From IMG/VR virus record IMGVR_UViG_3300027573_000779, positions 62,001-126,000 of that record: a DNA stretch of 64,000 nucleotides. One strand, 5' to 3'. This document shows positions 6,876 through 64,000 of this stretch, one piece after another. Within the stretch, counting starts at the first letter, position 1; each line of letters opens with the position of its first letter. Made by a program: the position numbers and the translations under genes. The notes under the pieces were generated by a model that ran no database searches, had not been told where the DNA came from, and worked only from the letters and a program-made list of their open reading frames with translations.

Positions 6876-6877
6876 AT

Positions 6878-7519: not shown

Positions 7520-7536
7520 AGTGTGTAAAATAAGAT

Positions 7537-7737: not shown

Positions 7738-7745
7738 CCCACTTT

Positions 7746-10361: not shown

Positions 10362-10370
10362 AATTACAAT
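10342..10370 (+). promoter_or_regulatory. Candidate sigma-70-type promoter
   Basis: TTGAGA-N17-TACAAT, 11 nt before ATG 10382. Confidence 0.55.
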
Positions 10371-10381
10371 ATTAATAACTT

Positions 10382-10951
10382 ATGTTACAATTCTTTAAGC
10401 CCACTTCTCGCAATTCAGGGTCAGCCTGTTCTTTTTCAAACGATACCGAAAGAGAAGGATTTTATCTCTCAATGGTAAAACAAGCCTCATGGGATGCCGA
10501 AACCAAAAGAGGGAAGTTCTTTTCAAACAAGAAGAATCCCGAAGCCTCGGTTTCAGCTAAACTAAGCCTTACTGAGGTTGGTGGATTTTTAAATGTTTTA
10601 GAGAAAAACAAAAAGCTTCATTCTGTTCATAGCACTGATAAGCAAACCGTTATTATCGATTTCAGTCCTTACTTGAAGGAAAACGTGCAGATAGGTTTTA
10701 GTCTCTCTGTCAACAAAACAGCAGGCGAACAAAAAACATCCTTTCTTATTGGGTTCAACTTGGATGAAGGAAGAGTTATTAGGGAATACTGCGTAGCTTT
10801 TCTCCAACGTCAGTTTGCCGTTTTGGACGCTGTTGACACTGCTTATAGGGCTAAAGGTCAGGAGTGGAAGAAGAACAACCCTCCCGCTCAAACAGAACCA
10901 GTAGCACCCGTAGTTCCTCAGGAAGATGAATCTAATTTAGACAACGTGTAA
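10382..10951 (+). CDS. Hypothetical protein, possibly ssDNA-binding
   Basis: Beta-rich body with a Pro-rich, acidic C-terminal tail (PQEDESNLDNV), next to the polymerase. Function is inferred. Confidence 0.4.
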   Translation: MLQFFKPTSRNSGSACSFSNDTEREGFYLSMVKQASWDAETKRGKFFSNKKNPEASVSAKLSLTEVGGFLNVLEKNKKLHSVHSTDKQTVIIDFSPYLKENVQIGFSLSVNKTAGEQKTSFLIGFNLDEGRVIREYCVAFLQRQFAVLDAVDTAYRAKGQEWKKNNPPAQTEPVAPVVPQEDESNLDNV

Positions 10952-49746: not shown

Positions 49747-50853
49747 ATGGCAAGAAACAGAGTTATTTATCAATCAGAGGGTGTATTTGCTGGTCAAAGA
49801 ACCCCTTGCACCGGTGTTAATCATACTGGCGCGGCTGATGTAAAAGAAATTTATCGTGTCCAAAGCGCGAATTATTCATTCAACCTTGGAAAACGAGACG
49901 TTAATCAATTTGGTGAACTCGCCGCAATCGATAGGATTCTAGTTGACCCTCCTACCGTTTCGCTCGATTTTACCTATTTGCTGGCCAATGTCTATAATGA
50001 ACAGGCATTGGGAATGACAGTTGGGATAAGCACTAATCCTACATCTAATGCTTTTTCAGGCATTTTTGCGGGTGCCACCGACGAAAAAGCTTACTGGGTT
50101 AAGACGGTTGCCTATGGTACTGACCTTCACGGTCTACCGTCTACTGGTTATGTTTTCGGCGCAATTGGTTTTGGTAACGGGTATATTAGCTCGTACAGTA
50201 TTGACGCTGCCGTAGGAGATTTCCCAAGAGCGAGCGTTCGTGTTGACTGCTCAAACATGAAGTTTGACAACTGGCTCAGCACCGACGAAGCAAAACAAAG
50301 CCCTTGTGTTAATAAAGAAAATGGAACACTCATTGCCGCAGATACTTATAGACTTCCTTCTGGAACGTCTACAACTTCTGCCCTTGACCAAACCACCGTT
50401 CTTCGTCCCGGTGACGTAGTTATGACTTGGGATAATGCCGCTGCGGCCACTATGGGCACGGCTATTAACGATGCCAAAATTCAAAGTTTCACTTTGTCTA
50501 GTGATATTTCTAAGACTCCGTTGAATAAGCTTGGAAGCAAGTTTGCATATTCGCAAGAAACCAACTTCCCAGTTACTGCCAGCCTTCGAATTACTGCTGC
50601 TGTGGGTGATATGAACACCGGTTCTCTTACCCAACTTCTGGAATCTACTGGAGTTAATACTGTGGGTGTCAAAATTTTTGCTCCTACGGGTTCTACCGTT
50701 AACTTCGGCTTTGACCTTAAGGGTGCTCAGCTTGATAGCCAAGAATATAGCTCCAGTATCGGTGATAGCAAAACTGTAACTATGAACTTCAGTGTTCCTA
50801 TTGCAGGCGCTAACGACCTTACTCGTGGTATTTTCCTAAGCGGAAGAGTCTAA
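49747..50853 (+). CDS. Major tail tube protein
   Basis: RVQSANYSF...DVNQFGEL; precedes chaperones and tape measure; followed by a strong terminator. Confidence 0.75.
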   Translation: MARNRVIYQSEGVFAGQRTPCTGVNHTGAADVKEIYRVQSANYSFNLGKRDVNQFGELAAIDRILVDPPTVSLDFTYLLANVYNEQALGMTVGISTNPTSNAFSGIFAGATDEKAYWVKTVAYGTDLHGLPSTGYVFGAIGFGNGYISSYSIDAAVGDFPRASVRVDCSNMKFDNWLSTDEAKQSPCVNKENGTLIAADTYRLPSGTSTTSALDQTTVLRPGDVVMTWDNAAAATMGTAINDAKIQSFTLSSDISKTPLNKLGSKFAYSQETNFPVTASLRITAAVGDMNTGSLTQLLESTGVNTVGVKIFAPTGSTVNFGFDLKGAQLDSQEYSSSIGDSKTVTMNFSVPIAGANDLTRGIFLSGRV

Positions 50854-50874
50854 TCCTGTTGTAAAATAAACTAG

Positions 50875-50907
50875 ATAAGCCCGAAGAAATTCGGGCTTAT
50901 TTTTTTT
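50875..50907 (+). terminator. Intrinsic terminator
   Basis: ATAAGCCCGAA-GAAA-TTCGGGCTTAT then T run. Confidence 0.92.
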
Positions 50908-50966
50908 GTTCTTTTTTTGGGAAACCTTGTGTAAAGATTAGTAGGTAAAAGGTCAGTTCCAAGGTT

Positions 50967-51281
50967 ATGGACATAAATAGTGAAAATCTGAAAGATTATA
51001 TTCTCTTTCATGTAACTAGAAAGATAACAAATCTTTATAAACATATACTTTTTATTCTGGAAGATTTGCGCGATGAAAAGTATTCAATGCAAGACCCAAA
51101 GAGTTATTCGCAAACCAGAAAACGGGTTTTGGATTTAGGAAATGACGCCATAAGAGAAATTAACGAACATTTTAAACATTTAGAGGTACAAATTAATGAA
51201 AACAAAACCCAATATCCAATCGGTGATTCGGGAACGTTTGTGTTTGCAAAGTCTTCAAAAAACAATGGAAGAAAAGTTTAG
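50967..51281 (+). CDS. Hypothetical protein
   Basis: Preceded by TGTGTAA at 50928 and AGGTAAAAGG. Confidence 0.6.
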   Translation: MDINSENLKDYILFHVTRKITNLYKHILFILEDLRDEKYSMQDPKSYSQTRKRVLDLGNDAIREINEHFKHLEVQINENKTQYPIGDSGTFVFAKSSKNNGRKV

Positions 51282-51429
51282 GGTGACGCCCAAGCTCGAA
51301 TATATTAAATCTACAGCTTTTTTAATTAAATTTAAAAACTGGGATGATAGCACTAAAAAAGACTTTATTAAAAATTTAGGCGGAAAGGTAAATTTTAAAC
51401 AAACACAGGAGTTTTTAAATACATTATGA
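51265..51429 (+). CDS. Small hypothetical protein
   Basis: Fills the gap; ATGA overlap with next gene; start uncertain. Confidence 0.4.
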   Translation: MEEKFRVTPKLEYIKSTAFLIKFKNWDDSTKKDFIKNLGGKVNFKQTQEFLNTL

Positions 51430-52151
51430 AAAAATTGCACGAGTTCACGGTATATAAGGAAACCGAAATAGAAGTTACGGTAAAGGATGAAAACGATAAG
51501 GACGTAGTAAAAAAGGAAAAGAAACGCGAGCCTTTTAAGTATTTTATCGCTAAACCTACCCGAAATCAAATTGATGAAGCAGACTTTTTCTATGCTCAAA
51601 AGTTTAATGAGGCGGCTAAAGCAGGACTTTTAACTAGAGCCTTGCTCGCTAAACGTTATTCAAACGATGGCGGCTCAATGAGTGAACCGGATAAAGAACA
51701 GTATGTATCGCTTTATACCGCCCTTTTTACCAAGGAAAATGAATATAAATCTTTAGCCGGTTTGCCGGAAGATAAGCAGGACAAGGAGAAAATAAAGAAA
51801 GTTACAGAAGAAATTATTGAGCTTCAAAAAGAAATTCAAGATTTTGAAGCTACCCAAATGAGTCTTTACGACCAAACTGCCGAAAGTTGGGCTAGGAATA
51901 AAACTATTCTTTGGTGGGTTCTTTTCCTGTCATATAAGTATACTGACGGCGAAAATTTTGAACCTGTTTTTAAAGGCCAGATTTTTGAGGAAAAAGACGC
52001 TGTTTATGGGGAAATTTGGGATTCAGAGGATAGTTTTCAGTTGGAAGTTGTTAATAAATTTGTCTTCTTTGTTAGTTTTTGGTATACAGGTCGCGCCAAT
52101 AAGCCAGAAGATTTTGCCGAAATAGCTAAAAGATTTGAACCAGAGTCCTAA
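51426..52151 (+). CDS. Putative tail assembly chaperone (gpG-like)
   Basis: Charged helical protein between tube and tape measure genes. Confidence 0.55.
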   Translation: MKKLHEFTVYKETEIEVTVKDENDKDVVKKEKKREPFKYFIAKPTRNQIDEADFFYAQKFNEAAKAGLLTRALLAKRYSNDGGSMSEPDKEQYVSLYTALFTKENEYKSLAGLPEDKQDKEKIKKVTEEIIELQKEIQDFEATQMSLYDQTAESWARNKTILWWVLFLSYKYTDGENFEPVFKGQIFEEKDAVYGEIWDSEDSFQLEVVNKFVFFVSFWYTGRANKPEDFAEIAKRFEPES

Positions 52152-52172
52152 AAATAAACTAACGTCCTGTTC

Positions 52173-52201
52173 GGCCCTTACCTAAAGTAGGGGCTTTTTT
52201 T
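52173..52201 (+). terminator. Intrinsic terminator
   Basis: GGCCCTTAC-CTAAA-GTAGGGGCT then T run. Confidence 0.8.
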
Positions 52202-52204
52202 GTA

Positions 52205-53221
52205 GTGAATAAACTAGATGAAATTAAACATAAAATTGCTCTTGCTGATATTTTAGTAGGTTATTCCACAGTAATATTTAATAATCAAACCATCTATATC
52301 AAACATTTTACCTTTCAAGAACACCTAAAAGTTGAACAAGAATATGAAACAAGCTTTGAAATAGCTGTTAAAAAGGGCGTTCCAACCATTGAAGACAAAA
52401 TAAAAGAACTTATTAAAGAAAAAGAGTGGACCGACGAAGAAGAAAAACAGTTCCAAAAACTTCCTCAAGATATAGGTATTTTAAAAGATACCAAGAAAAA
52501 ATTCTTCTTGGAAAAAGACGTGGAAAGAATTGATAAAAATATTAAGGCTGAAGAGGAGAAATTGCAAAAATTGGAGACTAAAAGAAACAGCCTATTAGGT
52601 TACACCGCAGAAACTTACGCAACAAAAAAAACTAACGAACTGTTTGTTTTTCATACCTTTAGAAATCAATTAGAACTAGATAAAACTTTATATTCTTGGG
52701 AAGAGTTTAATGAGTTGGATGAAAGTCAAATGGGCGATTTAATTAATCTTTTTAATAAAGATTGCGTTAGATTTGCCCCTCAAGAGATGAAAAAAACAGC
52801 TATTTTAAACTCTCACATGCAAATGATTTATTTGGCGGGAGAAGATTTGTGGAACTTTTATGGTAAGCCGGTAGTTCAATTTACCGCCCGTCAAAGCGAG
52901 CTTTATAGCCTAGGACGTTATTTTAAAGGACTTATTTCGGACTTAAAAGATAAGGTCACTAGCGATGTTTTAGACGACCCGGATAAACTAATTCAATATG
53001 TAGACTCTCAAAAAGCCGCTGAAACCCTTGGAACCGCCAAAATTCCTGAAGGAAAAGAATCAATTGGAGGAGGAACGGCTATTGTGGGAGCTTCCACTGA
53101 AGATTTAAAGAAATTAGGCTTAGATAAAGAAAAGGGCGCTGATAGTTTGGCTGAAGAAGCTGGAAAGAAAGGCGGCTCTTTAAATATGGAAGATTTATTA
53201 AAATTACACGGTTTGGTGTAA
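52205..53221 (+). CDS. Putative tail assembly chaperone (gpT-like)
   Basis: Directly before tape measure; FYGKPVVQFT..Q..L and DDPDKL motifs. Confidence 0.55.
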   Translation: MNKLDEIKHKIALADILVGYSTVIFNNQTIYIKHFTFQEHLKVEQEYETSFEIAVKKGVPTIEDKIKELIKEKEWTDEEEKQFQKLPQDIGILKDTKKKFFLEKDVERIDKNIKAEEEKLQKLETKRNSLLGYTAETYATKKTNELFVFHTFRNQLELDKTLYSWEEFNELDESQMGDLINLFNKDCVRFAPQEMKKTAILNSHMQMIYLAGEDLWNFYGKPVVQFTARQSELYSLGRYFKGLISDLKDKVTSDVLDDPDKLIQYVDSQKAAETLGTAKIPEGKESIGGGTAIVGASTEDLKKLGLDKEKGADSLAEEAGKKGGSLNMEDLLKLHGLV

Positions 53222-53242: not shown

Positions 53243-56200
53243 ATGGCCAATGATGGAGTAAGAGTACCTGTAGTACTAGAGTGGAATCAAGCGATTCAAG
53301 ACTCTATAGCACAGGCACGAAGAATCCCGCCAGTTAACGTTAGAGTTAATACTGGCCGGATTGGAGATGGTTTTAAACACGCGTCTAAAGAGGCCGAACA
53401 GTTTGAACGAGCCTTAGCTAGCGCCCAAACCCGCGTTTTAACCCTCGGGGCGTCTTTCGGCGCTCTGTTCGCAATTCAAAGAGGCTTTAAAGCCTTAATC
53501 CAAACAACCATTGATGTTGAAAAGCAGCTTAAAGACATTAATGTTATTTTGGGAGTAAGCACAAGCAGTCTTAGCACCTTTTCTGAGCAACTGTTTGGTA
53601 TAGCTAAAAATACCGGCCAAAGCTTTGAAACAGTAGCTAAAGCCGCCTTGGAATTTAGCCGCCAAGGTCTTGGAGTTCAAGAAACTTTAAAAAGAACCAA
53701 TGACGCCCTTATTTTAACCCGCCAAACTGGATTAGATGCCGCTGAAGCAACCGACGCTATCACTGCCGCTATTAACAGCTTTAGTCAAGCTGCTCTGACT
53801 TCAAGCGATATTGTTAATAAGTTTGCTAAGGTTGACCAAAACTTTGCAGTTAGTTCCGCTGACTTAGCAGAAGCTATTAAACGGGTGGGTTCTAGCGCTG
53901 AAGAAGCGGGAGTAGGAATTGATGAACTTATTGCTTTAGTTACCTCTGCCCAACAAATAACTCAACGTGGCGGTGCTGTAATTGGTAACGCTTTTAAGAC
54001 TATTTTTACTCGTACAGCCAGACCCCAAGTGCTTAATGACCTTGAACAACTTGGAATTACTGTCAGAAACGCTCAAGGAGATATTCTCCCGGCTGTTCAA
54101 ATCCTCACAAATTTGGCGAACAGTTATGATAATTTAAGTCAGGCCCAACAATCTGCCGCCGCTGAACTTGTAGGGTCTGTTTATCAAATTAACATTTTAA
54201 AAGCTTCTTTAAAAGATTTGGGTAAAGAACACTCGTTTTACTCTAAGGCTCTCAATGACTCTTCAACCGCAACTGACGAAGCTGTTCAACGTAACGAAGC
54301 TTTAAATACAACTCTAGCGGCTTTAATTAATAGAACTAAAGAAAACGTAAGGCAGTTTTCGGCTAATGTGGGACAGGACACTTTTGGCCCTTCAATTCGA
54401 AGAGTTGCTGGTCTTGCTAATGGTTTCTTGGAAAATGCTAATAACATTTTAGGTGCCGATAAAGCTGAAGTGGCTTTTAAAGAAATTGGTTCAGTTCTTG
54501 GAAAAGGACTGGTTAGGGGTTTTGGACAGTTCTTACAAGGTCCGGGTTTGGCGCTGATTGGTGTTGCACTGTTTAAATTTGCCAGTCAGTTCGCAAGGCT
54601 GGCAACAGAAGCTTATAAACTTTTGACTGACCTTAACAAAAGCACTGACCAAAGGGCCGCTATTGAGTCTCGCGTTTTAGGCGTTTTAAGACAAGAGCCT
54701 AATATTTATAGCCAAATACTAGGAAATAGTTTAAGTGTTGTTCAGGCACAAGAAAAGGTTCTTCAAATTATAACGGCACAAAATGCAGCCTTAAACGCCC
54801 AAAAAGCAATAGCTTCACAACTAACATCCACCCTCATTAATACTGGCGCAGTAGGAGTCAATCCTAAGACTAGGGAAGTGGTGACCAATCCAGCTTTAAA
54901 AAAAACACGCTCAGAAGGTAGCATTCCGAACTTTGCGGTAAATATTTTGGACGCTCAAAAGGAAATTGAAGGCGCTTATAAAGCTAAATACATTCCCGGC
55001 CAAGTGCGCCAAGTGGGAGACGCAGTAATTAATAATGCAGAAAGTATTAAAACTAGCGCCGCACACCCCCAAGAAAAAGCTATAGTGCCGCCTCAAGGCA
55101 GCGAAGCGGGACAAAAATACAAAGAAGCTTATCGAACTATTTATGGTAAAAGCCCTTATGGGGATGCAATTACCAAGGGGAGAAACGCTTTTCAGGTTCA
55201 GTGGATGAAGTCAATCGGCGCTAAAAGAGGGTTGGATTTAACTAATCCAGATAATATTTTAGTGCTTGCAAAACAGTTCAGAGAAACCTATGGGTCACAA
55301 CAGGGGCTGTTGCCATTTAATAAAGGAAAGGTGCCAAGTTTTGCCTCTAGTTTAACTTTATCAACTTCAAAAAACTTTGTTAAACTCGCAAAAGAAAGGG
55401 GTGTCAAAATTGTCAGAGAAGACCAGAGGGTTCCCCAAGGTAGTGCTTTTTATATTCGTTCTGGCGCAGAAGGAAAGAAAATAGTTCTTCCAAAAAAGAC
55501 TCCTATTGATGTTCTTGCTCATGAAGTAGGACACGACCTTTCATATGATTACTTAAATATATACTCTCCAAGACTTTTAAAAGAACAATCAGCTAACATC
55601 GAAGCCTTAAAAAGAATTCCCACAGAAAAAGAAAGACAGGGATATCGTGAAACACTAAGTCCTGCAACTAAAACATATAAAATTGGAATATTAAGAGGTA
55701 TTTTGAAGGATTTTGCTCCTAATATAGACGACGAAAGTATTTTTATTAATGAACTCAGAAAGCAGGAAGGCAAACATTCTGATAGATATTCCCCCGTAAT
55801 AAGAGCGCACAGTACCGCTTTGCGTGCTTTGATAAAAGATATAGGACCAAAAAAAGTAAAAGAGATATTGTCACAATTGCCCGAAATAGACAAAACCGAT
55901 TTAAAAAGAAAACCTTACGCTTCGGGGCACGTTCCAAACTTCAACCTCTTCAGTAAGGTTTCTACTGAAGACGAAGCTAACCGAATGGTTAAAGTCTCTT
56001 CGGTTAACGCGCTGAAGCCTTATTTGAAGAAATCAGAAGGTGATGTGCCAAATTTTGCCTCAGGGCGCGTCCCGAACTTTGCTTCTAGTTTATCTCTTTC
56101 AACTAGTAAAAAACTATTAAGGGAAGCTAAAAAAACAGGAATAAAAACACTAAGAACCAACGAACCAATACCTTATTATGATATTCCTTCGAGTTCGGTT

Positions 56201-59200
56201 CGCGCTCCAAAAGGAACTTCTTTTGATGTTATTGCGCACGAACTTGGTCACGGATTTTCTTATCAGGAAAACCCCCTTCTGGAAAGAGTGCGTTCAGATA
56301 TAAAATCAGAAGTGGGCGCTAATACTGAAATTTTAAACAGATTATCAGGAAAAGAAAAGAAATCATTTGCTAAACAAATGCTTAATCCTTTTAAAACCTA
56401 CAAGATAACATCTTTAGTTGATTCTTTAAGAGGACTGGTTCCCCTACCTGAGATGGTCAAAATCATTGGACAACACAGAATAAGAACCAAAGATTTAGGA
56501 AAAAGAGCCGGGGATTTAGGTAATTATAGTGATTTTAGAAAATCTCAATCACAAGTTCTAAGAGACATTGTTAAGACAGTGGGACCACAAAAAGTTAAAG
56601 AGCGCATTTCGAATCTTTCACCGGTTAATAAACAAGACTTAAAGGCGCGTTATTTTGCTTCAGGGCGAGTGCCCAACCTTGCCAAAAGTTCCTACTCTTT
56701 GGTTCATAGTACAACTCCACAGTTGGCTAAGACAATAGAGTCAGAGGGCCTTAAACCTAGAAGAAAAGAGGGCTTTGAAAAGGGGTATTTTTCGCAACAT
56801 GTTACTAACTTTGAGAAACTTGCTGAAGAAGTCAGAGCAAGCGAGTTTCCTGATTTGCCTAGTAGACTAAACTCGGTTTATTTAACTCCAGAAAGTCGAA
56901 AATTTAATAGGTTTGGAACGCATTTTAAAGTTGCCCCAAATAAAGAAAGCTATATTTTCAACTTAAAAAAGATAGATAAAGCTTTTGATTTAGCGGGTCC
57001 TTATGGGACGAGCACTGTTCCAAATACTAAATTACGCGAACTTGCTCGTGAATATTTCCAATCCGGCATTCCTTTAAATAGACAAAATCTAAATAAAGTT
57101 TTAGAAAAAGAGAAAGAAAATACGGGTTATGACTATGGAGACAATCCTTTTTTTGAAATCCTGACGCCGGGACCAGTTTCAGCTAAAAAAATAAAAAGGC
57201 TTAACTCAAAAGGCGCGGTTCCAAACTTTAATATTGATGTTAATGGTATTTTTTCACAACTTCCTGAGCGTGAACGCGTTGTAATAGAAGAACACGCCGA
57301 TGGATTAAAATTGGGCGAAATTGCAAAGAAATATAATATTTCAAGAAATAAAGCAAGCTCTATTTTCAATCGCGGACGTAATAGTTTTATAAAGCAATAC
57401 GGTTTGGCTAAAAAGGGTTTTGGAGAGTTCGCGGCACAAGGTAAAATCCCAAACTTTGCTAAAATCTACAAACTTCGCACTGGATTTCCTGAACATATTT
57501 TAAAACAAATTCAATCATTACATGGTAAACAATTACGAATATTTCCGACTAAGGACCACTTTCCTAAAGAGTTGCGAAACGATATTATAAAGTATGGAGA
57601 AAACAATATTCCCAAGTTTGACCCAAACTTAATAATCGACAGTAATGAAATTATTGAAGTTGAACACGATGATAATATTCGAGGACTTCATGGAACCAAT
57701 ATTGAGAAAATTGTAGTAAAGAAAACAACGCCTTATTTAGACCAACATCTGGCAATTGCCAAAGATGGCGGTATTAAGAGTATTTGGCACACTTTAAATC
57801 CAGACAGGTTTAATAAACCACAAAATCCTAGAAATAGAATTTATAGTCAGGGCCAAGTGCCGAATTTTGCTTCTTCATTTTCTAATATCAGTTTAGCAAA
57901 AGCTCCACATAATTCTACTGCGATAAGAAGACTGGGAATACCAAAAACCGGCAGTTATGCTTCCTATTACTTTGACAGGAATAAACACATAAACATAAGT
58001 TTCATTGAATCTAACCAAAAAGGGGACGCTTTTAGGTTATTTAAAGCTTTGGGGCGCACCGCCCGTAGAATTAAGCGTCCAATTATAAGTGAAACTCTAG
58101 TCAAATCGTCCAAACAACCTGACGAAAACCAAACTAATTGGGAACAACTTTTAGTAAGATATCCTCAATTACGCTACCGGGACTTACCAAACGCTTCAAC
58201 CAATGGGGTTTTTCGGCCAAATCTTCTAGGAAGTGAAGAACGAAGCTTTAACACCTTTGAAGAACTAAAAACTATAGTAAACCAAGTTCCTTCAGATATT
58301 TTCAAAAAAAACCTTAGAACAGGATTCACAAGTGTCGGCAACCTCTCCACTACTTTTAAAAACAAAGGGCAAGCGCCAAATTTTGCTTACATTCCATTCA
58401 TTTCTCCTCTTGTCGGGCGCGTGGTGACTAATTTGGTGCATTCTGGCGAAGGTTTTAGTATGGCGGCTTTAAAACCTGCTTTTAATTTTGCTAAGGAAAA
58501 GGGCATAAAACAAACGATTAAAAATATTATTTTAGACAAACCGGCGCACCAAGGAACTTTTTTTGGTTTTAACGAAGAAGGAAGAGAAGACTTCGGCTTG
58601 TCCGAATTTGGTTTTCGAAAAATGTTTGGTTTGGAACCTAGAATTCCACCAAATCCAGAAGTTAAACTCCGTCAAATTCCGGGCAAGAAAAACACCTATG
58701 CAATAGGTGGAAGAAATCCACTACAAAATTTTGGAGTTAATCTAACAACAAAAACTCCTCAAAATGTTAGATATCGCCCTCAAGACCCAAATACAATTAG
58801 AAGTTTGTTTAGGAGTCCAGATTTCGGAGCTTTTAACCTAGATGCCAACACCAAAAACAGAAAAATTCGCTATTCTGACACTTGGGATTTTGCACTCCAT
58901 GGGAGCGAAAAGTTGAATTTTAAGGAATTAAAAGACGAACTAAAAAGACGTTTTATTAGACAGCCCGAACTTGAATCTATCAAAGATGAATTTAAATTAA
59001 ACGTTCTTCCAAAAGTTTTAAAACAAAACCCTTTAAAAACAATTAAGGATATTAAAGAACTTTTTCCCAAAAACAGACTTAAGAGTGTTTTGAATCCTGC
59101 GAATCTTGTTTTCCAAGGTAATGCGGGAGCCAGTCTTTTTACTAATGAGCCGGTTCATTCTTATGGTAGTTCACAGTTAACAAAACTGTTTAGGAAGCTA

Positions 59201-62200
59201 GTAAACAGTGTCTCGTCACCAGCAACATTCGTAGGCCAAGTTACAAATCCCGATGACAAAAAACTTCTTTTTGATAGTCTTACTGACCTTGCAAATAGCG
59301 ATATAGACCTTCAAAAAACCAAAGCTACGCCTGCCGCCAAATTTTTAGGTACAAAATATAAACAAAACAAATTAAAAGAATCATTTATAACACTTCAGGA
59401 TAGATTGTATAATAGATTCAATTTTAATCCTTCTTCAAAACGTGATTTTAGTAATCGCAAGGACGCTTTTCCAATTGGCAAGCCGGGAATCAACATTTTT
59501 TCGGCTATAGAAAAATATGGTAGAGCCAAAGGTGAAGTGCCAAATTTTGCTTCCTCTTTGCCTTTATCAACCGCCAAAGAATTATTAGCTCTAGCCAAAG
59601 AAAGAAAGATTCGCATTACTAGAGATAAAGAACTTGGAGCTTTTCATAGATTTTCAGAAAGAAGAATTAATCTTCCTAAAGGCGAATCAATTGAAACTTT
59701 CGCGCATGAATTGGGTCACAGTTTATCTACCGATAATTTTTATAAATTTGCTAATGCAAATCGGATAGAAAGAGAAGTAATGGCTAATCAAGAGATTGTC
59801 CAACGACTGGTTGACCCAAAAGAACAAGAAACATTTAAAACAAACACTCTTGAATCTTTTAAATCTTATAAAAGCGGAATAATACTAGAACGGGTTTGGC
59901 CACAATTGCAAATTCCAGAAGAAAAACGCAATCAATATATTGAAATTCAACAAAAAGAATTTAAAAAAACTCAGAGAAGTAAAGGTATAAGTCCAGAGCA
60001 TCGAAGTAGCGCTGCTGTATTACGAAAACTTGTTAAAGATTTTGGGCCAAAAACCATAAAACAACTTATTAGTTCCACTCCCCGCGACGAGAGGGAAGCT
60101 TTAAAACTGCGCTATTCTTTTGGAAAAATCCCTAGTTTTGCCGTAATGAGTCCGCAGGAAAAAGCCTTTAAAGATATCGCTTTAAGACTAAATTCAGAAA
60201 AACATATAGGATATGGCCCACAAAAATATTTTTTACCATTTTTGTCTGATAAAACCGTAAATCCCTATCAATCATTATATTATAGCACCCCATACGAACA
60301 ACAACAAACAAAAAAAGAAGAAGTTGAAAAGAAACTAATAAATTTTATTCCCGAAGGTAAAAATTTCCTAAGACCATATAACAATATTCTACAGCAAGCC
60401 CCCGCTGTTAAAGATGCTTACAGGTTTGTAAGAAACCTTTTTGGTGATTTTGCTGGTCGTGGTTCTGGCGACCCTCTTGAGCGTTCTGCAAACAACTATT
60501 TGAAGATAATGCGTGGTTTACAAAAAACCGGTGTTTTTAAAGAAATAAACAAACTGTCGCCGCAACAATTATTAAGAGGAGGGATAAAATCAGGTAATCT
60601 TTCTCTATACGGTTTTGGGGGAGACCCCCTTCCTGAATCAAAATTCAAAACAAGAGCTTTGGAGTCTGGCAATCGCGACCTTGTGGCTAACGACCCATTA
60701 TATTCGTTTCATCAAAGGTTTGAAAGTAAAAAAGAAGAATTAAAACTAAGAAAACAGTTTAAAGCTTTTACAAGCTCCTTTGTAAACTCTGTTTCTAAAT
60801 TCAGGAACATTCCAAGAATAAAAAATAAACTTGAAGAAATAACTGGCGGTGACCATACAAGACTAGCCCTAACTGCAAAAAAATATATTCCGCCTGAAAT
60901 TTATGAACGTTTAGCTTACCTAAGCAAAACCTTTGTAAATACAAAACGGCAGGCTTATAATCTTGGTGTAGACATTGATTCTCCATTTTACTTTCGTGGA
61001 CAAAGTAGAAGCGAAGCGGCAATTTTAGACAAACTTAAAGAATTTACCTCTTTGGGATTTGCAAGTCAGACAGATAGATTAGGCGTTACTTTAAATAATA
61101 ATCCATTGTTTGCTGCTGCTTTTGGCGTTACTTCCGGCAAAGAGTTTGGAAAACCGGGGTTATTGGGAATTTATAGAAAAAAACAAATCGACAGTAGAGA
61201 ACCAAGAAGGCTAGGAGAAAACATCTCTTCTGGCAGGCTTAGAATAGATGACCTGTTTGGTTTTATTGATTTGGCGGCTCAAAAATTTGTTCCAGCGTCT
61301 TCTCTAAGTAAAGTATATGGTCCAGAACACGCGCCCTCTTCTGAAATTCTGGAGAAAACCAAATCTTTGCTAAGTAAAGAAGATTACGACATAATAAAAT
61401 CTCAAAGTTTACATAAAGATTATAATCCAAACACACAATTAACTCTTACAAGAGGATTAGATGTTCGTAGAGGAAAGAAAATATCAGACTACCGTGGTCC
61501 AAGTCAAACTAACCCCAATCTTGGCGAACTTTCTTTTAAAGAGTTGCTTGACTATCTAAAACACTCAATAGATACTACCCAACCGGGAGTTATTCCAACA
61601 GGTGGGCCAGAAAGTTCTTTTGCAAATGTCAGTTCTGACGCTATTTTAGTTAAAAACCGAAAAACCGCTAAAGAATTAGAAAATAAACCCGTTCAAAAAG
61701 AGGGACAGGCGCATTTCCAAAGGCTGGTCAGTCAATCAGAATTATTCGGATACGACAGACTACAAAACCTTTTTGATAACCCAAATCTTTCAACAGAAAG
61801 AAAAAACAAACTGTTGAGAAGCGGAATCGTTGTTAATCTTCCTGAAATTAGAGGGCAAATTGGATATAGAACGGCAGCACCCGAACGCGAATACCCAATT
61901 TTAACATCAACCCCAAAAACTTCTGGACCTGTAAATATTGGCAGATTATTTGCTGTTTCGCCTTATATATTCAAAAAATCAGGTTATTCAAAAGGAAAGT
62001 TGCCAAACTTTGCAAAAGCTCCGCAATTTTCTCAACTTCAATTAAAAGAAATTTTGGGCGGCTCAACTGAAGCTAGAAAAGCTGTTTTCCAAGACAGTCA
62101 ATTTGTTTTAAAATACGGAAAATCTTCTGGTCACGCTATAAATGAATTTGTTTCAAATAGATTATTTAATGCTTTTGGCGAAAACGTGCCCGAAGCTCAA

Positions 62201-64000
62201 TTAATTGACACTCCTCAAGGTAAAGCCTTTCTGTCTAAATTCATCCAAAGTCAATCTTTTGGAGAACTGTATGATAAAGGAGATATTAATACAAGACAAA
62301 GATTAATTCAAGGAGTTAAACCTTCTTTTGCGGCTCATGCGGCCTTTGCTAATTGGGACGCATTTGGCGATTGGAATCCAGCAGGAGCCAATGTAAGACT
62401 AGATTCAAATAATAGACAGTTTTTTGTGGACTTGGGTGGGGCTTTAGCTTATAGAGGTTTGGGCGCACCTAAACCCAATTTTGGTCCAGAAGTGCCCGAA
62501 CTGCGTTCTCTTATTGATTATGCATCTAATCCTTATGCTAAAGCCGCTTTTAAATTTCAACCAGAAGAGCTAAAATCTAATGTTGCCGATTTTCTAAAAA
62601 GAACTCCGTCAAATTTAAGCGGTTTGTTAGAGTCTTTAAATAGTGAAACCCAAGGGGACCCACATATCACTAAAGCACTAAAACAAATTCCTAATCGTTT
62701 AAATTATCTTAGAAACTTTATTAAATCCAAAGGTTCTATCCCAAATTTCGCGTTCTTTTCAGGAATAGCTTCTGTCGCGCAATCACTTACAGGAGCTAAA
62801 AAACTTCCAAAACAAAACATTCGTGCTAACATTACTCCCGAAGAAATGGAGGCAATCTATTTTAATTACGCTAAAACCATTTATAATCCTCAAAAAGGAA
62901 AAATCCCAGTAGGTTTAAATTATTTTGCGAACAAGGCTTTCAATTCCGCGATGTTTGAACATCAAGGCTCTTATGTTTTTGGTTCTCACGATAACGAGTT
63001 GTTCCTTCCAACTCACTTTGCTCCAAAAAGCTTAAAGGGCGGATTTGCGGCGCAAAAAGCATTAAGTGAATATTCTAATGTAATGTATGCCGTAACTCAG
63101 GAAATGACCCCAATGCTAGAAAGACTTGGGTTCAGTGTGGCTAAATCTGGAGTTAAAGTTCCCTTCAGGGGCGGAACTGCATTAAAAGACTTTTTGGTTT
63201 CTGATAAACTGCGAACCCCAATGTTTCTTACCAATTTCCTTTCTCAAATGAAACAGGGAGCGGGTTCTAAATACGTTAAACAATATTTAACAAGAGAAGA
63301 CCAAGCTAAATTTAGTCATTATTATCCTTATGGTGGGGGAACTCCGGGCGAAGATGAAGCTATTGAATACTTAAGAAACAGAGGAATTACAGCTAATCAG
63401 GGCAAAATTCCTTCGTCTAATGCGTATTTAAAAGCTAAGTTAACGCACGTCCCCAATTTTGCTCTTCTTGACTCTCTTAGGAGTTTAATTGATGTTCAAA
63501 ACAATAAGTTTTTGGGTTCGAAATTACCCAATACACTTGGAGAAATTTACCCTGTTATAAGGGACCAATTTCCTAAAATAGGACCAATCTTAAAGGGAAT
63601 TAACCCTAGATTACTACTAGATGATATTAATGTTGATAGTGGGACATTATATCGAGGTTTTGCTAGAGCTGTGCGCTCAAAAACATATGACGGTCCTTTT
63701 AGAGCATATGACAGTCCTATTAAACCCTCCGAAACCGTCACAGGTGAACTTGACTTTTTATATAACTTTACGCACGCTTTAAATAGAGGCCAACCGTTAA
63801 AATTCCAAAAAGCCTCGCTAGAAGCCCTGTTCCAAATTGGCGCTCAAGCAAAACAAGAAGGGATAACTGATAAAGTAGGTATCAATACAAATAGCGACCC
63901 ATTTTTTAGAAACCTCGGAAACCCGCAACAACATAGAGATTTTGCACGAAACTTTTTAAATTTAGATAAATCAAAACCCAATCAATCCTTTATTCAAAAA
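53243..64000 (+). CDS. Giant tape measure protein fused to an array of enzyme-like modules (3' truncated; absent from ORF track)
   Basis: Hand translation from ATG 53243 shows no stop in 3586 codons. First ~560 aa are TP901-type tape measure (AALEFSRQG, NFAVSSADLAEAIKRVGS, GAVIGNAFKTIFTR); the rest is modules separated by GxVPNFA linkers. Confidence 0.93.
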   Translation, partial: MANDGVRVPVVLEWNQAIQDSIAQARRIPPVNVRVNTGRIGDGFKHASKEAEQFERALASAQTRVLTLGASFGALFAIQRGFKALIQTTIDVEKQLKDINVILGVSTSSLSTFSEQLFGIAKNTGQSFETVAKAALEFSRQGLGVQETLKRTNDALILTRQTGLDAAEATDAITAAINSFSQAALTSSDIVNKFAKVDQNFAVSSADLAEAIKRVGSSAEEAGVGIDELIALVTSAQQITQRGGAVIGNAFKTIFTRTARPQVLNDLEQLGITVRNAQGDILPAVQILTNLANSYDNLSQAQQSAAAELVGSVYQINILKASLKDLGKEHSFYSKALNDSSTATDEAVQRNEALNTTLAALINRTKENVRQFSANVGQDTFGPSIRRVAGLANGFLENANNILGADKAEVAFKEIGSVLGKGLVRGFGQFLQGPGLALIGVALFKFASQFARLATEAYKLLTDLNKSTDQRAAIESRVLGVLRQEPNIYSQILGNSLSVVQAQEKVLQIITAQNAALNAQKAIASQLTSTLINTGAVGVNPKTREVVTNPALKKTRSEGSIPNFAVNILDAQKEIEGAYKAKYIPGQVRQVGDAVINNAESIKTSAAHPQEKAIVPPQGSEAGQKYKEAYRTIYGKSPYGDAITKGRNAFQVQWMKSIGAKRGLDLTNPDNILVLAKQFRETYGSQQGLLPFNKGKVPSFASSLTLSTSKNFVKLAKERGVKIVREDQRVPQGSAFYIRSGAEGKKIVLPKKTPIDVLAHEVGHDLSYDYLNIYSPRLLKEQSANIEALKRIPTEKERQGYRETLSPATKTYKIGILRGILKDFAPNIDDESIFINELRKQEGKHSDRYSPVIRAHSTALRALIKDIGPKKVKEILSQLPEIDKTDLKRKPYASGHVPNFNLFSKVSTEDEANRMVKVSSVNALKPYLKKSEGDVPNFASGRVPNFASSLSLSTSKKLLREAKKTGIKTLRTNEPIPYYDIPSSSVRAPKGTSFDVIAHELGHGFSYQENPLLERVRSDIKSEVGANTEILNRLSGKEKKSFAKQMLNPFKTYKITSLVDSLRGLVPLPEMVKIIGQHRIRTKDLGKRAGDLGNYSDFRKSQSQVLRDIVKTVGPQKVKERISNLSPVNKQDLKARYFASGRVPNLAKSSYSLVHSTTPQLAKTIESEGLKPRRKEGFEKGYFSQHVTNFEKLAEEVRASEFPDLPSRLNSVYLTPESRKFNRFGTHFKVAPNKESYIFNLKKIDKAFDLAGPYGTSTVPNTKLRELAREYFQSGIPLNRQNLNKVLEKEKENTGYDYGDNPFFEILTPGPVSAKKIKRLNSKGAVPNFNIDVNGIFSQLPERERVVIEEHADGLKLGEIAKKYNISRNKASSIFNRGRNSFIKQYGLAKKGFGEFAAQGKIPNFAKIYKLRTGFPEHILKQIQSLHGKQLRIFPTKDHFPKELRNDIIKYGENNIPKFDPNLIIDSNEIIEVEHDDNIRGLHGTNIEKIVVKKTTPYLDQHLAIAKDGGIKSIWHTLNPDRFNKPQNPRNRIYSQGQVPNFASSFSNISLAKAPHNSTAIRRLGIPKTGSYASYYFDRNKHINISFIESNQKGDAFRLFKALGRTARRIKRPIISETLVKSSKQPDENQTNWEQLLVRYPQLRYRDLPNASTNGVFRPNLLGSEERSFNTFEELKTIVNQVPSDIFKKNLRTGFTSVGNLSTTFKNKGQAPNFAYIPFISPLVGRVVTNLVHSGEGFSMAALKPAFNFAKEKGIKQTIKNIILDKPAHQGTFFGFNEEGREDFGLSEFGFRKMFGLEPRIPPNPEVKLRQIPGKKNTYAIGGRNPLQNFGVNLTTKTPQNVRYRPQDPNTIRSLFRSPDFGAFNLDANTKNRKIRYSDTWDFALHGSEKLNFKELKDELKRRFIRQPELESIKDEFKLNVLPKVLKQNPLKTIKDIKELFPKNRLKSVLNPANLVFQGNAGASLFTNEPVHSYGSSQLTKLFRKLVNSVSSPATFVGQVTNPDDKKLLFDSLTDLANSDIDLQKTKATPAAKFLGTKYKQNKLKESFITLQDRLYNRFNFNPSSKRDFSNRKDAFPIGKPGINIFSAIEKYGRAKGEVPNFASSLPLSTAKELLALAKERKIRITRDKELGAFHRFSERRINLPKGESIETFAHELGHSLSTDNFYKFANANRIEREVMANQEIVQRLVDPKEQETFKTNTLESFKSYKSGIILERVWPQLQIPEEKRNQYIEIQQKEFKKTQRSKGISPEHRSSAAVLRKLVKDFGPKTIKQLISSTPRDEREALKLRYSFGKIPSFAVMSPQEKAFKDIALRLNSEKHIGYGPQKYFLPFLSDKTVNPYQSLYYSTPYEQQQTKKEEVEKKLINFIPEGKNFLRPYNNILQQAPAVKDAYRFVRNLFGDFAGRGSGDPLERSANNYLKIMRGLQKTGVFKEINKLSPQQLLRGGIKSGNLSLYGFGGDPLPESKFKTRALESGNRDLVANDPLYSFHQRFESKKEELKLRKQFKAFTSSFVNSVSKFRNIPRIKNKLEEITGGDHTRLALTAKKYIPPEIYERLAYLSKTFVNTKRQAYNLGVDIDSPFYFRGQSRSEAAILDKLKEFTSLGFASQTDRLGVTLNNNPLFAAAFGVTSGKEFGKPGLLGIYRKKQIDSREPRRLGENISSGRLRIDDLFGFIDLAAQKFVPASSLSKVYGPEHAPSSEILEKTKSLLSKEDYDIIKSQSLHKDYNPNTQLTLTRGLDVRRGKKISDYRGPSQTNPNLGELSFKELLDYLKHSIDTTQPGVIPTGGPESSFANVSSDAILVKNRKTAKELENKPVQKEGQAHFQRLVSQSELFGYDRLQNLFDNPNLSTERKNKLLRSGIVVNLPEIRGQIGYRTAAPEREYPILTSTPKTSGPVNIGRLFAVSPYIFKKSGYSKGKLPNFAKAPQFSQLQLKEILGGSTEARKAVFQDSQFVLKYGKSSGHAINEFVSNRLFNAFGENVPEAQLIDTPQGKAFLSKFIQSQSFGELYDKGDINTRQRLIQGVKPSFAAHAAFANWDAFGDWNPAGANVRLDSNNRQFFVDLGGALAYRGLGAPKPNFGPEVPELRSLIDYASNPYAKAAFKFQPEELKSNVADFLKRTPSNLSGLLESLNSETQGDPHITKALKQIPNRLNYLRNFIKSKGSIPNFAFFSGIASVAQSLTGAKKLPKQNIRANITPEEMEAIYFNYAKTIYNPQKGKIPVGLNYFANKAFNSAMFEHQGSYVFGSHDNELFLPTHFAPKSLKGGFAAQKALSEYSNVMYAVTQEMTPMLERLGFSVAKSGVKVPFRGGTALKDFLVSDKLRTPMFLTNFLSQMKQGAGSKYVKQYLTREDQAKFSHYYPYGGGTPGEDEAIEYLRNRGITANQGKIPSSNAYLKAKLTHVPNFALLDSLRSLIDVQNNKFLGSKLPNTLGEIYPVIRDQFPKIGPILKGINPRLLLDDINVDSGTLYRGFARAVRSKTYDGPFRAYDSPIKPSETVTGELDFLYNFTHALNRGQPLKFQKASLEALFQIGAQAKQEGITDKVGINTNSDPFFRNLGNPQQHRDFARNFLNLDKSKPNQSFIQK
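54917..63463 (+). repeat. Dispersed in-frame linker repeat G-x-[VILA]-P-[NS]-[FL]-[AN]
   Basis: Copies start at 54917, 55325, 55925, 56039, 56063, 56663, 57212, 57440, 57851, 58367, 59531, 60122, 61994, 62732 and 63443 (THVPNFA), with a degenerate copy at 63401. Confidence 0.92.

What the first reader, a model, noticed from the sequence alone, without database searches (positions are those of the whole stretch)
54917..63463. GxVPNFA linker conserved at protein level: candidate cleavage or docking signal
Seen: GSIPNFA, GKVPSFA, GHVPNFN, GDVPNFA, GRVPNFA, GRVPNLA, GAVPNFN, GKIPNFA, GQVPNFA, GQAPNFA, GEVPNFA, GKIPSFA, GKLPNFA, GSIPNFA, THVPNFA, usually with S/A/N two residues before the Gly and basic residues upstream. 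Synonymous positions vary (Pro CCG/CCA/CCC/CCT, Asn AAC/AAT, Gly all four codons), so selection is on the peptide rather than on a DNA site. Inference: a protease recognition site (for the prohead protease at 31721, the internal zincins or a host protease) or a chaperone/tube-binding motif. It may also supply microhomology for module swapping.
Basis: partly seen in the sequence, partly recalled or inferred. Interest (0 to 1): 0.88.

Follow-up and report, generated by a model that had tools for sequence, protein, structure and literature searches.

The report
Junction motif in giant tape-measure protein
A nine-residue peptide signal marks every junction between the swappable modules of a 5,468-residue phage tail tape-measure protein, and it is conserved across at least 1,000 related protein clusters from uncultured aquatic phages; it is most likely a cutting or docking mark for delivering many proteins through the tail, and I found no description of it in the papers searched.

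Summary
All 15 listed peptides sit at the stated coordinates in one open reading frame (ATG 53243, running off the window). Shuffles predict 0.02 copies, and no other frame of the window has one. Codons vary, so selection acts on the peptide.

The ORF is a TP901-type tape measure protein (TMP) of a 209-kb uncultured phage. The full protein has 5,468 aa and 17 motifs.

The motif is a hallmark of the whole clade, with consensus [AS]-x-G-[FY]-[IV]-P-N-F-[ASN]:
- It occurs in all 120 best homologues and in over 1,000 clusters.
- It is almost absent from neighbouring genes.
- It is almost absent from non-TMP polyvalent proteins that share a cargo domain.

The motif lies in predicted coil at the C-terminal end of each shuffling cassette. 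Homology between relatives stops within 3 residues of it in 63% of cases, against 3% at random.

Best reading (about 0.4): a trans-read junction signal, most likely a processing site, of a TMP-anchored polyvalent protein. Docking to an assembly or host chaperone remains a serious rival.

Zincins occur in only 4 of 120 relatives, and ORF 31721 shows no protease signature.

Classical polyvalent proteins carry a different repeated junction motif of their own.

The parts
53243..64000 (+). Giant tail tape measure protein gene. It runs off the window; the full product P0001 is 5,468 aa with 17 motifs.
   Evidence: Stop-free frame. P0001 is 100% identical. The contig is IMGVR_UViG_3300027573_000779, 208,933 bp.
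53243..54916 (+). Conserved TP901-type TMP N-terminal core, about 558 aa, with no motif inside.
   Evidence: PF10145 E 1.8e-26. TIGR01760 E 5.7e-37. 45-50% identity to 119 homologues.
54917..54937 (+). Motif 1, GSIPNFA, at the junction between the core and cassette s1.
   Evidence: The first motif falls right after the core (about aa 540-650) in about 90% of the 120 homologues; about a tenth have it near aa 840-1800.
54938..55345 (+). Cassette s1, a small conserved alpha/beta module plus a lineage-specific helical extension, ending in motif 2 (GKVPSFA, 55325-55345).
   Evidence: Clusters with 60 homologues. Alignment A6. In the AF2 model the module has pLDDT about 70-75 and both flanking motifs are below 50.
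55346..55945 (+). Zincin cassette 1 (HEVGH at 55520-55534), ending in motif 3 (GHVPNFN, 55925-55945).
   Evidence: Paralogous to the other two zincin cassettes at 31-35% identity. HExxH positions.
55946..56083 (+). Short 38-aa cassette ending in motif 4 (GDVPNFA, 56039-56059), followed eight residues later by motif 5 (GRVPNFA, 56063-56083). This is a tandem junction.
56084..56683 (+). Zincin cassette 2 (HELGH at 56237-56251), ending in motif 6 (GRVPNLA, 56663-56683).
56684..57232 (+). Cassette of unknown function with a weak DUF2441 resemblance, ending in motif 7 (GAVPNFN, 57212-57232).
   Evidence: E 9e-4, below the Pfam cut-off. phrog_5663.
57233..57460 (+). 76-aa cassette with a sigma-70 region-4-like helix-turn-helix, ending in motif 8 (GKIPNFA, 57440-57460).
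   Evidence: PF08281/PF04545 E about 3e-4. TIGR02937 E 4e-6. All three scores are below the curated cut-offs.
57461..57871 (+). Cassette of unknown function ending in motif 9 (GQVPNFA, 57851-57871).
57872..58387 (+). Cassette of unknown function ending in motif 10 (GQAPNFA, 58367-58387). It is shared as a whole cassette with relative P0051.
   Evidence: residues 19-172 of 172 align to 17-181 of 181 in the relative's cassette.
58388..59551 (+). 388-aa cassette of unknown function ending in motif 11 (GEVPNFA, 59531-59551).
59552..60142 (+). Zincin cassette 3 (HELGH at 59705-59719), ending in motif 12 (GKIPSFA, 60122-60142).
   Evidence: (phrog_87 metalloprotease, E 1.3e-9).
60143..62014 (+). 624-aa cassette of unknown function ending in motif 13 (GKLPNFA, 61994-62014).
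62015..62752 (+). 246-aa cassette of unknown function ending in motif 14 (GSIPNFA, 62732-62752).
62753..63463 (+). 237-aa cassette of unknown function ending in motif 15 (THVPNFA, 63443-63463). This is the only copy without the Gly.
63464..64000 (+). Start of the next cassette. Two further motifs (P0001 aa 3721 and 3799) and a motif-free 1,663-aa C-terminal region lie beyond the window.
52205..53221 (+). Conserved 336-aa all-helical protein directly upstream of the TMP. It is a candidate partner or chaperone and is not protease-like.
   Evidence: Present in 77 of 80 related loci. AF2 pLDDT 81. No significant PDB or BFVD fold match; the best hit, which is not significant, is a tail assembly chaperone.
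51426..52151 (+). Conserved 253-aa-class protein (241 aa here) upstream of the TMP, with many invariant aromatic residues. It is a candidate partner.
   Evidence: Present in 74 of 80 loci. Alignment A3. No PDB, Pfam or PHROG match.
49747..51429 (+). Conserved putative major tail protein (49747-50853) and two small conserved ORFs (50967-51281 and 51196-51429) of the tail module.
   Evidence: Synteny in 73, 73 and 41 of 80 loci. No family hits. The functions are inferred from position only.

Best explanation
The region is the cargo-carrying middle part of a giant TP901-type tail tape measure protein that works as a tail-anchored polyvalent protein.

Architecture. A conserved N-terminal core and a conserved C-terminal region bracket a train of independently shuffling cassettes. 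In this phage they include three zincins, a sigma-like helix-turn-helix and a dozen unknowns. Relatives carry ART-PolyVal, DUF7178 and ParB-like domains. Each cassette ends in a flexible, basic, acid-poor tether followed by the short linear motif [AS]-x-G-x-[VI]-P-N-F-[AN].

Proposed role. The motif is a junction signal read in trans by one conserved partner of this phage clade. Most likely it is a site-specific processing site. The chain would be cut at each junction during tail maturation or after ejection, and the cassettes would leave the tail lumen as separate proteins. This would be a multiplexed version of the single maturation cut that separates the enzymatic end of the T5 tape measure protein from its body.

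Shown here: the motif, its junction position, its disorder, its clade-wide conservation, its restriction to TMPs, and the lineage-wide flavour of its variable position.

Inferred: that it is cleaved, when, and by what.
For: - Non-random and peptide-level.
- Clade-wide: present in all 120 top homologues. The conserved junction module that it flanks has 1,189 hits among 50%-identity clusters, and 133 of 136 further representatives carry the motif.
- Logo from 502 copies: G and P at 100%, N 99%, F 97% (G and P are fixed by the search pattern; N and F were free to be S and L). A/S at -2 in 88%. Basic residues are enriched and acidic residues depleted at -7 to -2.
- Restricted to TMPs: 293 copies inside TMPs against 13 loose hits in 518,000 aa of the other stop-free six-frame segments of the loci.
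- Absent from other polyvalent proteins: 0.019 per 1,000 aa in 102 non-TMP proteins sharing the ART-PolyVal domain, against 2.11 in TMP-anchored proteins.
- Cassette boundaries: 63% of homology segments end within 3 aa of a motif end, against 3% at random. Motif-to-motif cassettes recur at different positions in different proteins. In P0110, ART-PolyVal (877-1037) and DUF7178 (1064-1260) each fill one cassette.
- Imported cassette: one that still carries the classical polyvalent junction motif has the TMP motif appended directly after it.
- Disorder: the AF2 model places both motifs flanking cassette s1 in coil with pLDDT below 50.
- Flavour tracks lineage: within-protein identity at +1 is 0.459 against 0.348 +/- 0.017 when permuted. 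The non-aromatic flavour forms one clade on the core tree.
- Precedent: the T5 TMP is cut after R1127, between its body and its metallopeptidase part, and the fragment stays in the tail. The lambda TMP is also processed (PMC10038345).
Against: - No protease was found that could read the motif. Zincins occur in only 4 of 120 relatives. The two conserved genes next to the TMP are helical with no protease-like fold or motif. No peptidase domain was detected in the 35 larger window ORFs scanned against Pfam or PHROGs.
- Pro is enriched threefold right after the motif. A cut exactly after the last residue is therefore unlikely, and the scissile bond is unknown.
- No natural gene split at a motif was seen.
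- Every fact listed as support is equally compatible with a docking signal.
- There is no cultured relative, so no proteomic data exist.
Confidence: 0.4

Rival explanations
1. The motif is a docking signal for the phage's own tail-assembly machinery: the conserved helical proteins encoded just upstream, or the tail tube lumen. Each foreign cassette inserted in the tape measure protein carries one adaptor. The chaperone can then keep the cassette extended and soluble, and tube polymerisation can pass over it. The chain stays intact.
For: - The motif is TMP-specific and absent from head-type polyvalent proteins with the same cargo domain.
- Two clade-specific helical proteins of unknown function sit between the tail protein gene and the TMP in 74 and 77 of 80 loci. 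One of them has many invariant aromatic residues.
- The best BFVD hit of the other, which is not significant, is a tail assembly chaperone.
- The motif has a hydrophobic knob (aromatic, I/V, F) around a Pro-Asn turn on a flexible tether, which is typical of docking peptides.
- No protease was found.
Against: - The conserved N-terminal core (about 550 aa) and C-terminal region (1,250-1,660 aa) have no motif, so docking is not needed along most of the protein.
- Spacing ranges from 8 to 1,670 aa with no periodicity.
- The motif's invariant residues are far more conserved than the candidate partners, which are 23-51% identical.
Confidence: 0.25
2. The motif is a docking signal for a conserved host chaperone or prolyl isomerase that the unfolded tape measure protein meets during ejection: a SurA- or FkpA-type periplasmic chaperone, or a cytoplasmic Hsp70 acting as a ratchet. 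One handle per cassette would keep the chain soluble or pull it in.
For: - The commonest family variants, GYIPNFA and GFIPNFA, share Y-I-P-N or I-P-N with WEYIPNV. That peptide was selected by phage display and binds the SurA P1 domain with Kd 1-14 uM, within a described Ar-X-Ar-X-Pro preference (PMC11401910; PMC7195389).
- HK97 genome injection needs the periplasmic chaperone FkpA (PMC5099701).
- Near-invariance of the motif across phages whose own proteins are only 23-51% identical suggests a very conserved reader.
Against: - The resemblance was recalled and then checked only at the level of the published peptide. It is a lead, not a test.
- The first aromatic of Ar-X-Ar is not at the right spacing.
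- The window phage has lost the aromatic at +1 in all 17 copies.
- Hosts are unknown.
- Predicted cargo such as a sigma-like HTH and ART would act in the cytoplasm.
Confidence: 0.12
3. The motif cleaves itself at the invariant Asn, through an asparagine peptide lyase type of succinimide chemistry at N|F, so no protease is needed.
For: - Asn is 99% conserved and is followed by a 97% conserved Phe.
- No protease was found.
- From established knowledge, viral maturation cleavages of this class cut after Asn.
Against: - Two of the 15 window copies have Ser in place of Asn.
- The motif lies in predicted coil with variable flanks, so there is no folded catalytic environment.
- Known Asn lyases need a structured domain.
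Confidence: 0.05
4. The motif has no biochemical reader. It persists as microhomology that lets cassettes recombine, or as a neutral remnant of repeated duplication.
For: Cassette breakpoints coincide with the motif. Low-GC codon bias makes the 21-nt sites fairly similar, with some excess of CCT at Pro.
Against: - All synonymous codons are used, and codon use mostly follows the background.
- Window copies share a mean of only 65% nucleotide identity and mostly 5-8 nt of exact match.
- Amino-acid invariance over about 45% divergent proteins and 1,189 matching clusters requires purifying selection on the peptide.
- The -2, +1 and charge preferences of the flanks are protein-level features.
Confidence: 0.03

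Closest known systems
Polyvalent proteins of phages and conjugative elements (Iyer, Burroughs, Anand, de Souza, Aravind 2017, PMC5512222)
   Same: Both are giant multi-cassette proteins with mosaic, rapidly shuffling effector-type domains, delivered with the invading DNA. A relative (P0110) carries the signature ART-PolyVal domain PF18760 and DUF7178. The window protein carries zincins, the commonest polyvalent-protein domain.
   Different: - This protein is anchored to a tail tape measure core. That paper never mentions tape measure proteins or junction motifs.
- Zincins are rare here (4 of 120) but present in 90 of 101 classical proteins.
- Classical proteins use a different repeated junction motif, P-E-Q-[IV]-K-S-A-x-G-N-x-G-x-F-D-x4-D-I-R-[FY], with 276 copies against 0.1 expected. 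They lack GxVPNFA.
Maturation cleavage of tape measure proteins (T5 pb2 after R1127; lambda gpH)
   Same: In T5 the tape measure protein is cut between its body and an enzymatic (metallopeptidase) part during tail morphogenesis, and the fragment stays in the tail (PMC10038345).
   Different: Those proteins have a single cut with no known shared motif. This protein has up to 17 identical signals, one per cassette, and cleavage is not shown.
Polyprotein junction sites of RNA viruses (potyvirus NIa or picornavirus 3C type sites)
   Same: One conserved 7-9 residue site sits at every junction between functional units. All copies in a virus share the same flavour, and the flavour shifts by lineage.
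   Different: No cognate protease has been identified here. The carrier is a structural tail protein of a DNA phage.
SurA client motif (Ar-X-Ar-X-Pro; peptide WEYIPNV)
   Same: Aromatic, aliphatic, Pro, Asn order. Four residues are identical to the GYIPNFA variant.
   Different: The first aromatic is missing. The window phage lacks the +1 aromatic. Binding is untested and the hosts are unknown.

Membership tests
TP901-family phage tail tape measure protein | Match to the family profile above the curated cut-off | tested here: met
   PF10145 scores 93.7 bits against a cut-off of 33.2. TIGR01760 scores 127.5 bits against 28.8. More than ten PHROG tape-measure families match.
TP901-family phage tail tape measure protein | Position in a tail gene module downstream of the tail protein and chaperone-type genes | tested here: met
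   Nine upstream genes are syntenic in 41-77 of 80 loci. Their functions are inferred from position only.
TP901-family phage tail tape measure protein | Determines tail length and lies in the tube lumen | not testable with these tools
   No virion data exist and there is no cultured relative.
Polyvalent proteins (Iyer et al. 2017) | Very large protein combining several unrelated effector or enzymatic domains in a mosaic, shuffling arrangement | tested here: met
   17 cassettes, including three zincins and a sigma-like HTH. Cassettes are shared piecemeal with other proteins.
Polyvalent proteins (Iyer et al. 2017) | Signature Pfam domains of polyvalent proteins (ART-PolyVal, LPD families, MPTase-PolyVal) | tested here: not met
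   None were detected in the window protein. They are met in relative P0110: PF18760 at E 6.7e-25.
Polyvalent proteins (Iyer et al. 2017) | Classical repeated junction element ...QIKSAxGNxGxF...DIRF (defined here, not in the literature) | tested here: not met
   One copy in 353,817 aa of the TMP family, against 276 in 262,354 aa of classical proteins.
Polyvalent proteins (Iyer et al. 2017) | Packaged in the virion and delivered into the host | not testable with these tools
   Inferred from the fusion to the tape measure core.
Viral polyprotein processing site | One conserved short site at each junction of functional units | tested here: met
Viral polyprotein processing site | Cognate protease encoded by the virus | tested here: inconclusive
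   None was recognised in the window or in the 10-kb flanks of 80 loci. Zincins occur in 4 of 120. The rest of the 209-kb genome was not examined.
Viral polyprotein processing site | Demonstrated cleavage products | not testable with these tools
   Needs proteomics or expression experiments.
SurA-binding Ar-X-Ar-X-Pro motif | Two aromatics spaced by one residue, then a nonpolar residue and Pro | tested here: not met
   The family has aromatic-[IV]-Pro but no aromatic at -1 (3%). The window copies have a polar +1.
Asparagine peptide lyase (self-cleaving) site | Obligatory Asn at the scissile bond inside a folded catalytic context | tested here: not met
   Ser replaces Asn in 2 of 15 window copies. 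The motif lies in predicted coil with pLDDT below 50.

The most novel reading that the evidence does not exclude
Phage polyvalent proteins use dedicated junction codes, with at least two mutually exclusive dialects. GxVPNFA serves tail tape-measure-anchored trains. QIKSAxGNxGxF...DIRF serves the classical, zincin-rich ones. Each code is read by its own processing or loading machinery. In this clade the tail lumen would serve as a magazine that delivers up to 17 different proteins per chain (51 per trimer) into the host. The motif would be a portable coupler that makes any domain tail-deliverable.
Probability: 0.3. Interest if true: 0.85.

Novelty: new variant of a known kind. Interest (0 to 1): 0.72.

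Why it matters
If the motif is the coupler or cut mark of a tail-delivered cargo train, three things follow.

1. It defines a simple, portable rule for which proteins a large clade of uncultured aquatic phages injects. That turns hundreds of unknown cassettes into a catalogue of candidate host-takeover and counter-defence proteins.
2. It extends the polyvalent-protein concept from heads and conjugation systems to the tail lumen.
3. It gives a direct handle for testing the long-standing prediction that polyvalent proteins are processed into separate domains: a nine-residue site, plus a second dialect in classical polyvalent proteins.

It also raises a physical question. How does a 5,468-residue tape measure protein with globular cargo fit in, and set the length of, a tail?

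Tried and rejected
- Internal zincins as the general reader: rejected. HExxH occurs in only 4 of 120 relatives. They cluster in the giant-TMP clade with the non-aromatic flavour, but this looks like common descent.
- Prohead protease at 31721: no family, PHROG or PDB-sequence match for it or for its two downstream neighbours.
- Conserved neighbours as proteases: the 336-aa protein folds as an all-helical protein with no significant PDB or BFVD match. Profile searches of both neighbours against PDB sequences and PHROGs were empty.
- Fold of cassette s1: no significant match.
- Relationship of the s1 and 73-aa modules: hhalign gives 97% probability, but this is driven largely by the shared flanking motifs, so it is not claimed.
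- Natural gene splits or stand-alone modules ending in the motif: none found. The short hits look like fragments.
- Co-variation between the motif flavour and partner residues: abandoned. Only three loci are fully non-aromatic.
- Cultured relatives or prophages for host and proteome data: none. There are only 24-26% identical Firmicute phage cores and MAG contigs.
- Literature: no paper in the library holds the motif in a phage context, nor the classical junction motif.
The C-terminal third was therefore analysed only from P0001 in scripts.
Full report
**The observation**

Frame 2 of the + strand is open from 53240 to the end of the window (3,586 codons). The start is ATG 53243, behind an AAGGA. 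Shuffles of the same protein give 0.022 copies on average, and no other frame of the 64-kb window has a copy.

The codon claim is correct. All four Gly and all four Pro codons are used, as are both Asn codons. The 21-nt sites are only 65% identical to each other. S, A or N at -2 is present in 14 of 15 copies. Basic residues are enriched upstream over the 17 copies of the full protein.

**What carries the motif**

The first 558 residues are a TP901-type tape measure core: PF10145 E 1.8e-26, TIGR01760 E 5.7e-37, and many PHROG tape-measure families. The full protein is in the database as P0001. It has 5,468 aa and lies on a 208,933-bp IMG/VR contig, of which window base 1 is base 62,001. It has 17 motifs. 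The last is at aa 3799, and it is followed by a motif-free region of 1,663 aa.

Cutting at the motifs gives cassettes of 8 to 624 aa.
- Three cassettes are paralogous HExxH zincins of about 200 aa, 31-35% identical to each other.
- One 76-aa cassette resembles sigma-70 region 4, with scores below the curated cut-offs.
- The rest match nothing in Pfam, NCBIfam or PHROGs.

**The motif is a hallmark of a large clade**

All 120 best homologues carry it. These are TMPs of 1,973 to 5,468 aa with about 45% identity in the core, all from aquatic metagenomes. They have 1 to 17 copies each, and in about 90% of them the first copy lies right after the core.

A logo from 502 copies in 119 proteins reads [AS]-x-G-[FYLH]-[IV]-P-N-F-[ASN]. 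G and P are at 100% (both are fixed by the search pattern), N at 99% and F at 97%. Upstream there is a Gly- and Lys-rich, acid-poor tether, and Pro is enriched just downstream.

A profile of a conserved module flanked by two motifs finds 1,189 clusters at 50% identity. Of 136 further representatives, 133 carry the motif and none has more than 11 copies. The window protein, with 17 copies, has the most seen here.

Only MAG contigs, and no isolate genome, hold a relative. The nearest cultured phages share only a 24-26% identical core. The 80 IMG/VR loci have 28-48% GC.

**The motif is specific to the tape measure protein**

In the 80 loci with 10-kb flanks, 293 copies lie in the TMPs. Only 13 loose matches lie in 518,000 aa of the other six-frame stop-free segments of the loci.

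One relative, P0110, holds the polyvalent-protein domain ART-PolyVal (PF18760, E 6.7e-25) and DUF7178. Each sits in its own motif-to-motif cassette. A search with that region returned 102 non-TMP polyvalent proteins with the same ART domain. These have 0.019 motifs per 1,000 aa, against 2.11 in the 17 TMP-anchored hits. Three of their five loose matches are in P0137, which looks like a truncated TMP.

**The motif marks cassette boundaries**

- Segments between motifs cluster as whole units with at least 60% mutual coverage, and they occupy different ordinal positions in different proteins.
- In an all-against-all comparison of uncut proteins, 63% of the homology segments inside the variable region end within 3 residues of a motif end, against 3% for randomly placed segments. 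They start a median of 13 residues after the previous motif. Part of this is expected, because the motif itself anchors the alignments. Even so, homology does stop there.
- The window's zincin cassette aligns end to end with a cassette of P0016, and its ninth cassette with one of P0051.
- A backbone is shared by many members: core, an 84-aa module (in 60 of 120 homologues at strict coverage), variable cassettes, a 73-aa module (hits in 85 of 119), then a C-terminal region. In one subgroup a last motif lies about 90 aa from the C-terminus.
- An AF2 model of the window's first cassette with both flanking motifs (31 sequences, mean pLDDT 66) gives a small alpha/beta module at pLDDT about 70-75 and helices at 84-93. 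Both motifs fall in coil below pLDDT 50.

The motif is therefore a short linear signal on a flexible tether, not part of a fold.

**One reader per lineage**

The variable +1 position is more alike within a protein than between proteins: 0.459 against 0.348 +/- 0.017 in permutations, above all 500 of them. On a tree of the core, the proteins without an aromatic at +1 form one clade of giant TMPs that includes the window protein.

The window protein is extreme. Its +1 residues are K, S, H, D, R, A, Q, E or N in all 17 copies, residues that are very rare at that position in 610 copies from the wider family. An aromatic lies within -5 to -1 in 13 of the 17 copies. The closest other jumbo contig, L002, keeps F or Y at +1.

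This pattern fits a single trans-acting partner that changes with the lineage.

**Who reads it**

*Not the zincins, as a rule.* HExxH occurs in 4 of 120 relatives. They remain possible local readers in this phage. Three of those four proteins lie in the non-aromatic clade, but common descent explains this as well.

*Not a recognisable protease nearby.* Upstream synteny is strong, with nine conserved genes in 41-77 of 80 loci. None has a Pfam or PHROG match.
- The 336-aa protein next to the TMP models as an all-helical protein (pLDDT 81) with no significant PDB or BFVD match. Its top BFVD hit, which is not significant, is a tail assembly chaperone.
- The 253-aa protein has many invariant aromatic residues but no known relatives.
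- The 35 larger window ORFs scanned against Pfam or PHROGs show replication enzymes, glycosyltransferases, a J-like tail protein and an HNH nuclease, but no peptidase.

**Mechanism**

All the facts fit a junction signal read in trans. I rank processing first, at about 0.4.
- The layout of one signal at each junction between functional units, and none inside the long conserved parts, is that of viral polyproteins.
- Tape measure proteins are known to be cut. T5 pb2 is cut after R1127, between its body and its metallopeptidase part, and the fragment stays in the tail. Lambda gpH is also processed.
- The missing protease is the main weakness.
- The Pro enrichment after the motif argues that any cut lies inside the motif rather than after it.

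Docking to the phage's own assembly proteins (0.25) explains the TMP specificity and the lack of a protease. It does not explain why 550-aa and 1,250-1,660-aa stretches need no site.

Docking to a host chaperone (0.12) rests on two points. The first is a resemblance of GYIPNFA to the SurA-binding peptide WEYIPNV. The second is that HK97 needs FkpA for genome injection. The window phage lacks the key aromatic.

Self-cleavage at Asn (0.05) is weakened by two Ser copies and by the disordered context.

A purely DNA-level role (0.03) is contradicted by the codon data.

**A parallel found in passing**

The 101 classical polyvalent proteins carry their own repeated junction element, P-E-Q-[IV]-K-S-A-x-G-N-x-G-x-F-D-x4-D-I-R-[FY].
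- There are 276 copies against 0.1 expected, up to 11 per protein, with a median spacing of 262 aa and lineage-specific tails.
- 90 of these 101 proteins contain HExxH.
- The TMP family has a single copy, at the end of P0110's ART cassette, and the TMP motif is appended directly after it.

The two dialects are thus mutually exclusive, and an imported cassette needed the local one. Neither motif appears in the polyvalent-protein paper or elsewhere in the searchable library.

**Verdict**

It is a new variant of a known kind: polyvalent proteins and TMP maturation are known, whereas a tail-anchored cassette train with a dedicated junction code is not. What the signal does biochemically remains open and is directly testable.

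Noticed in passing
Proteins P0138-P0239, not in the window: Classical non-TMP polyvalent proteins carry their own repeated junction element, P-E-Q-[IV]-K-S-A-x-G-N-x-G-x-F-D-x4-D-I-R-[FY]. There are 276 copies against 0.1 expected, up to 11 per protein, at a median spacing of 262 aa. 90 of these 101 proteins contain HExxH. I found no description of it in the searched literature.
   Followed up: partly
P0110 aa 1025-1055 (relative of the window protein): Hybrid junction: the classical element at the end of an ART-PolyVal cassette is followed directly by the TMP-type motif (...DIRYAN-GFIPNFA). It looks as though an imported cassette had the local signal added.
   Followed up: partly
window 51426-53221 (+): Two clade-specific helical proteins (241 and 338 aa here) lie between the tail-protein genes and the TMP, conserved in 74 and 77 of 80 loci. 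Neither has a relative in Pfam, PHROGs, PDB or BFVD. Two small ORFs (50967-51281 and 51196-51429) overlap here, but in most relatives they are adjacent genes with ATGA overlaps.
   Followed up: partly
window 53243-64000 and P0001: This TMP has the most motif copies (17) of about 390 family proteins checked. It is the only one whose +1 position is polar or charged in every copy, with an aromatic moved to -5..-1 instead.
   Followed up: yes
L058-L063, about 4.1-6.5 kb in each locus (a 555-564-aa ORF upstream of the TMP): A conserved non-TMP protein in five related loci carries one motif-like GL[LA]PNLA. This could be chance or a second client of the same reader.
   Followed up: no
By synteny with related loci they sit where portal, scaffold or protease, and major capsid protein would.
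   Followed up: partly
window 23070-27035 (+) and 36191-37078 (+): A 1,321-aa protein with a Phage-tail_3 (J-like) domain lies upstream of the head genes, far from the TMP. An HNH endonuclease and three large unknown ORFs (903, 736 and 1,154 aa) are inserted between the capsid-like and connector-like genes.
   Followed up: no
window 993-14096 (+): Replication and modification block: DnaB-like helicase, primase, PD-(D/E)XK nuclease, a DNA polymerase III alpha-type polymerase and two glycosyltransferases.
   Followed up: no
Family consensus in alignment A1, the cassette of about 300 aa after s1: The commonest variable cassette of ordinary family members shows a G-x-D-F-D ... A-D-x-K pattern that resembles a PD-(D/E)xK nuclease signature. 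This was seen by eye only.
   Followed up: no
window 54938-55345 and L001 21182-21415: The two small conserved backbone modules (s1 and the 73-aa module) share weak internal similarity (A-G-x-x-P-x-x-[IV] and G-x-V-x-Y-N-x-x-[DA]-E). The hhalign probability of 97% is inflated by the flanking motifs.
   Followed up: partly
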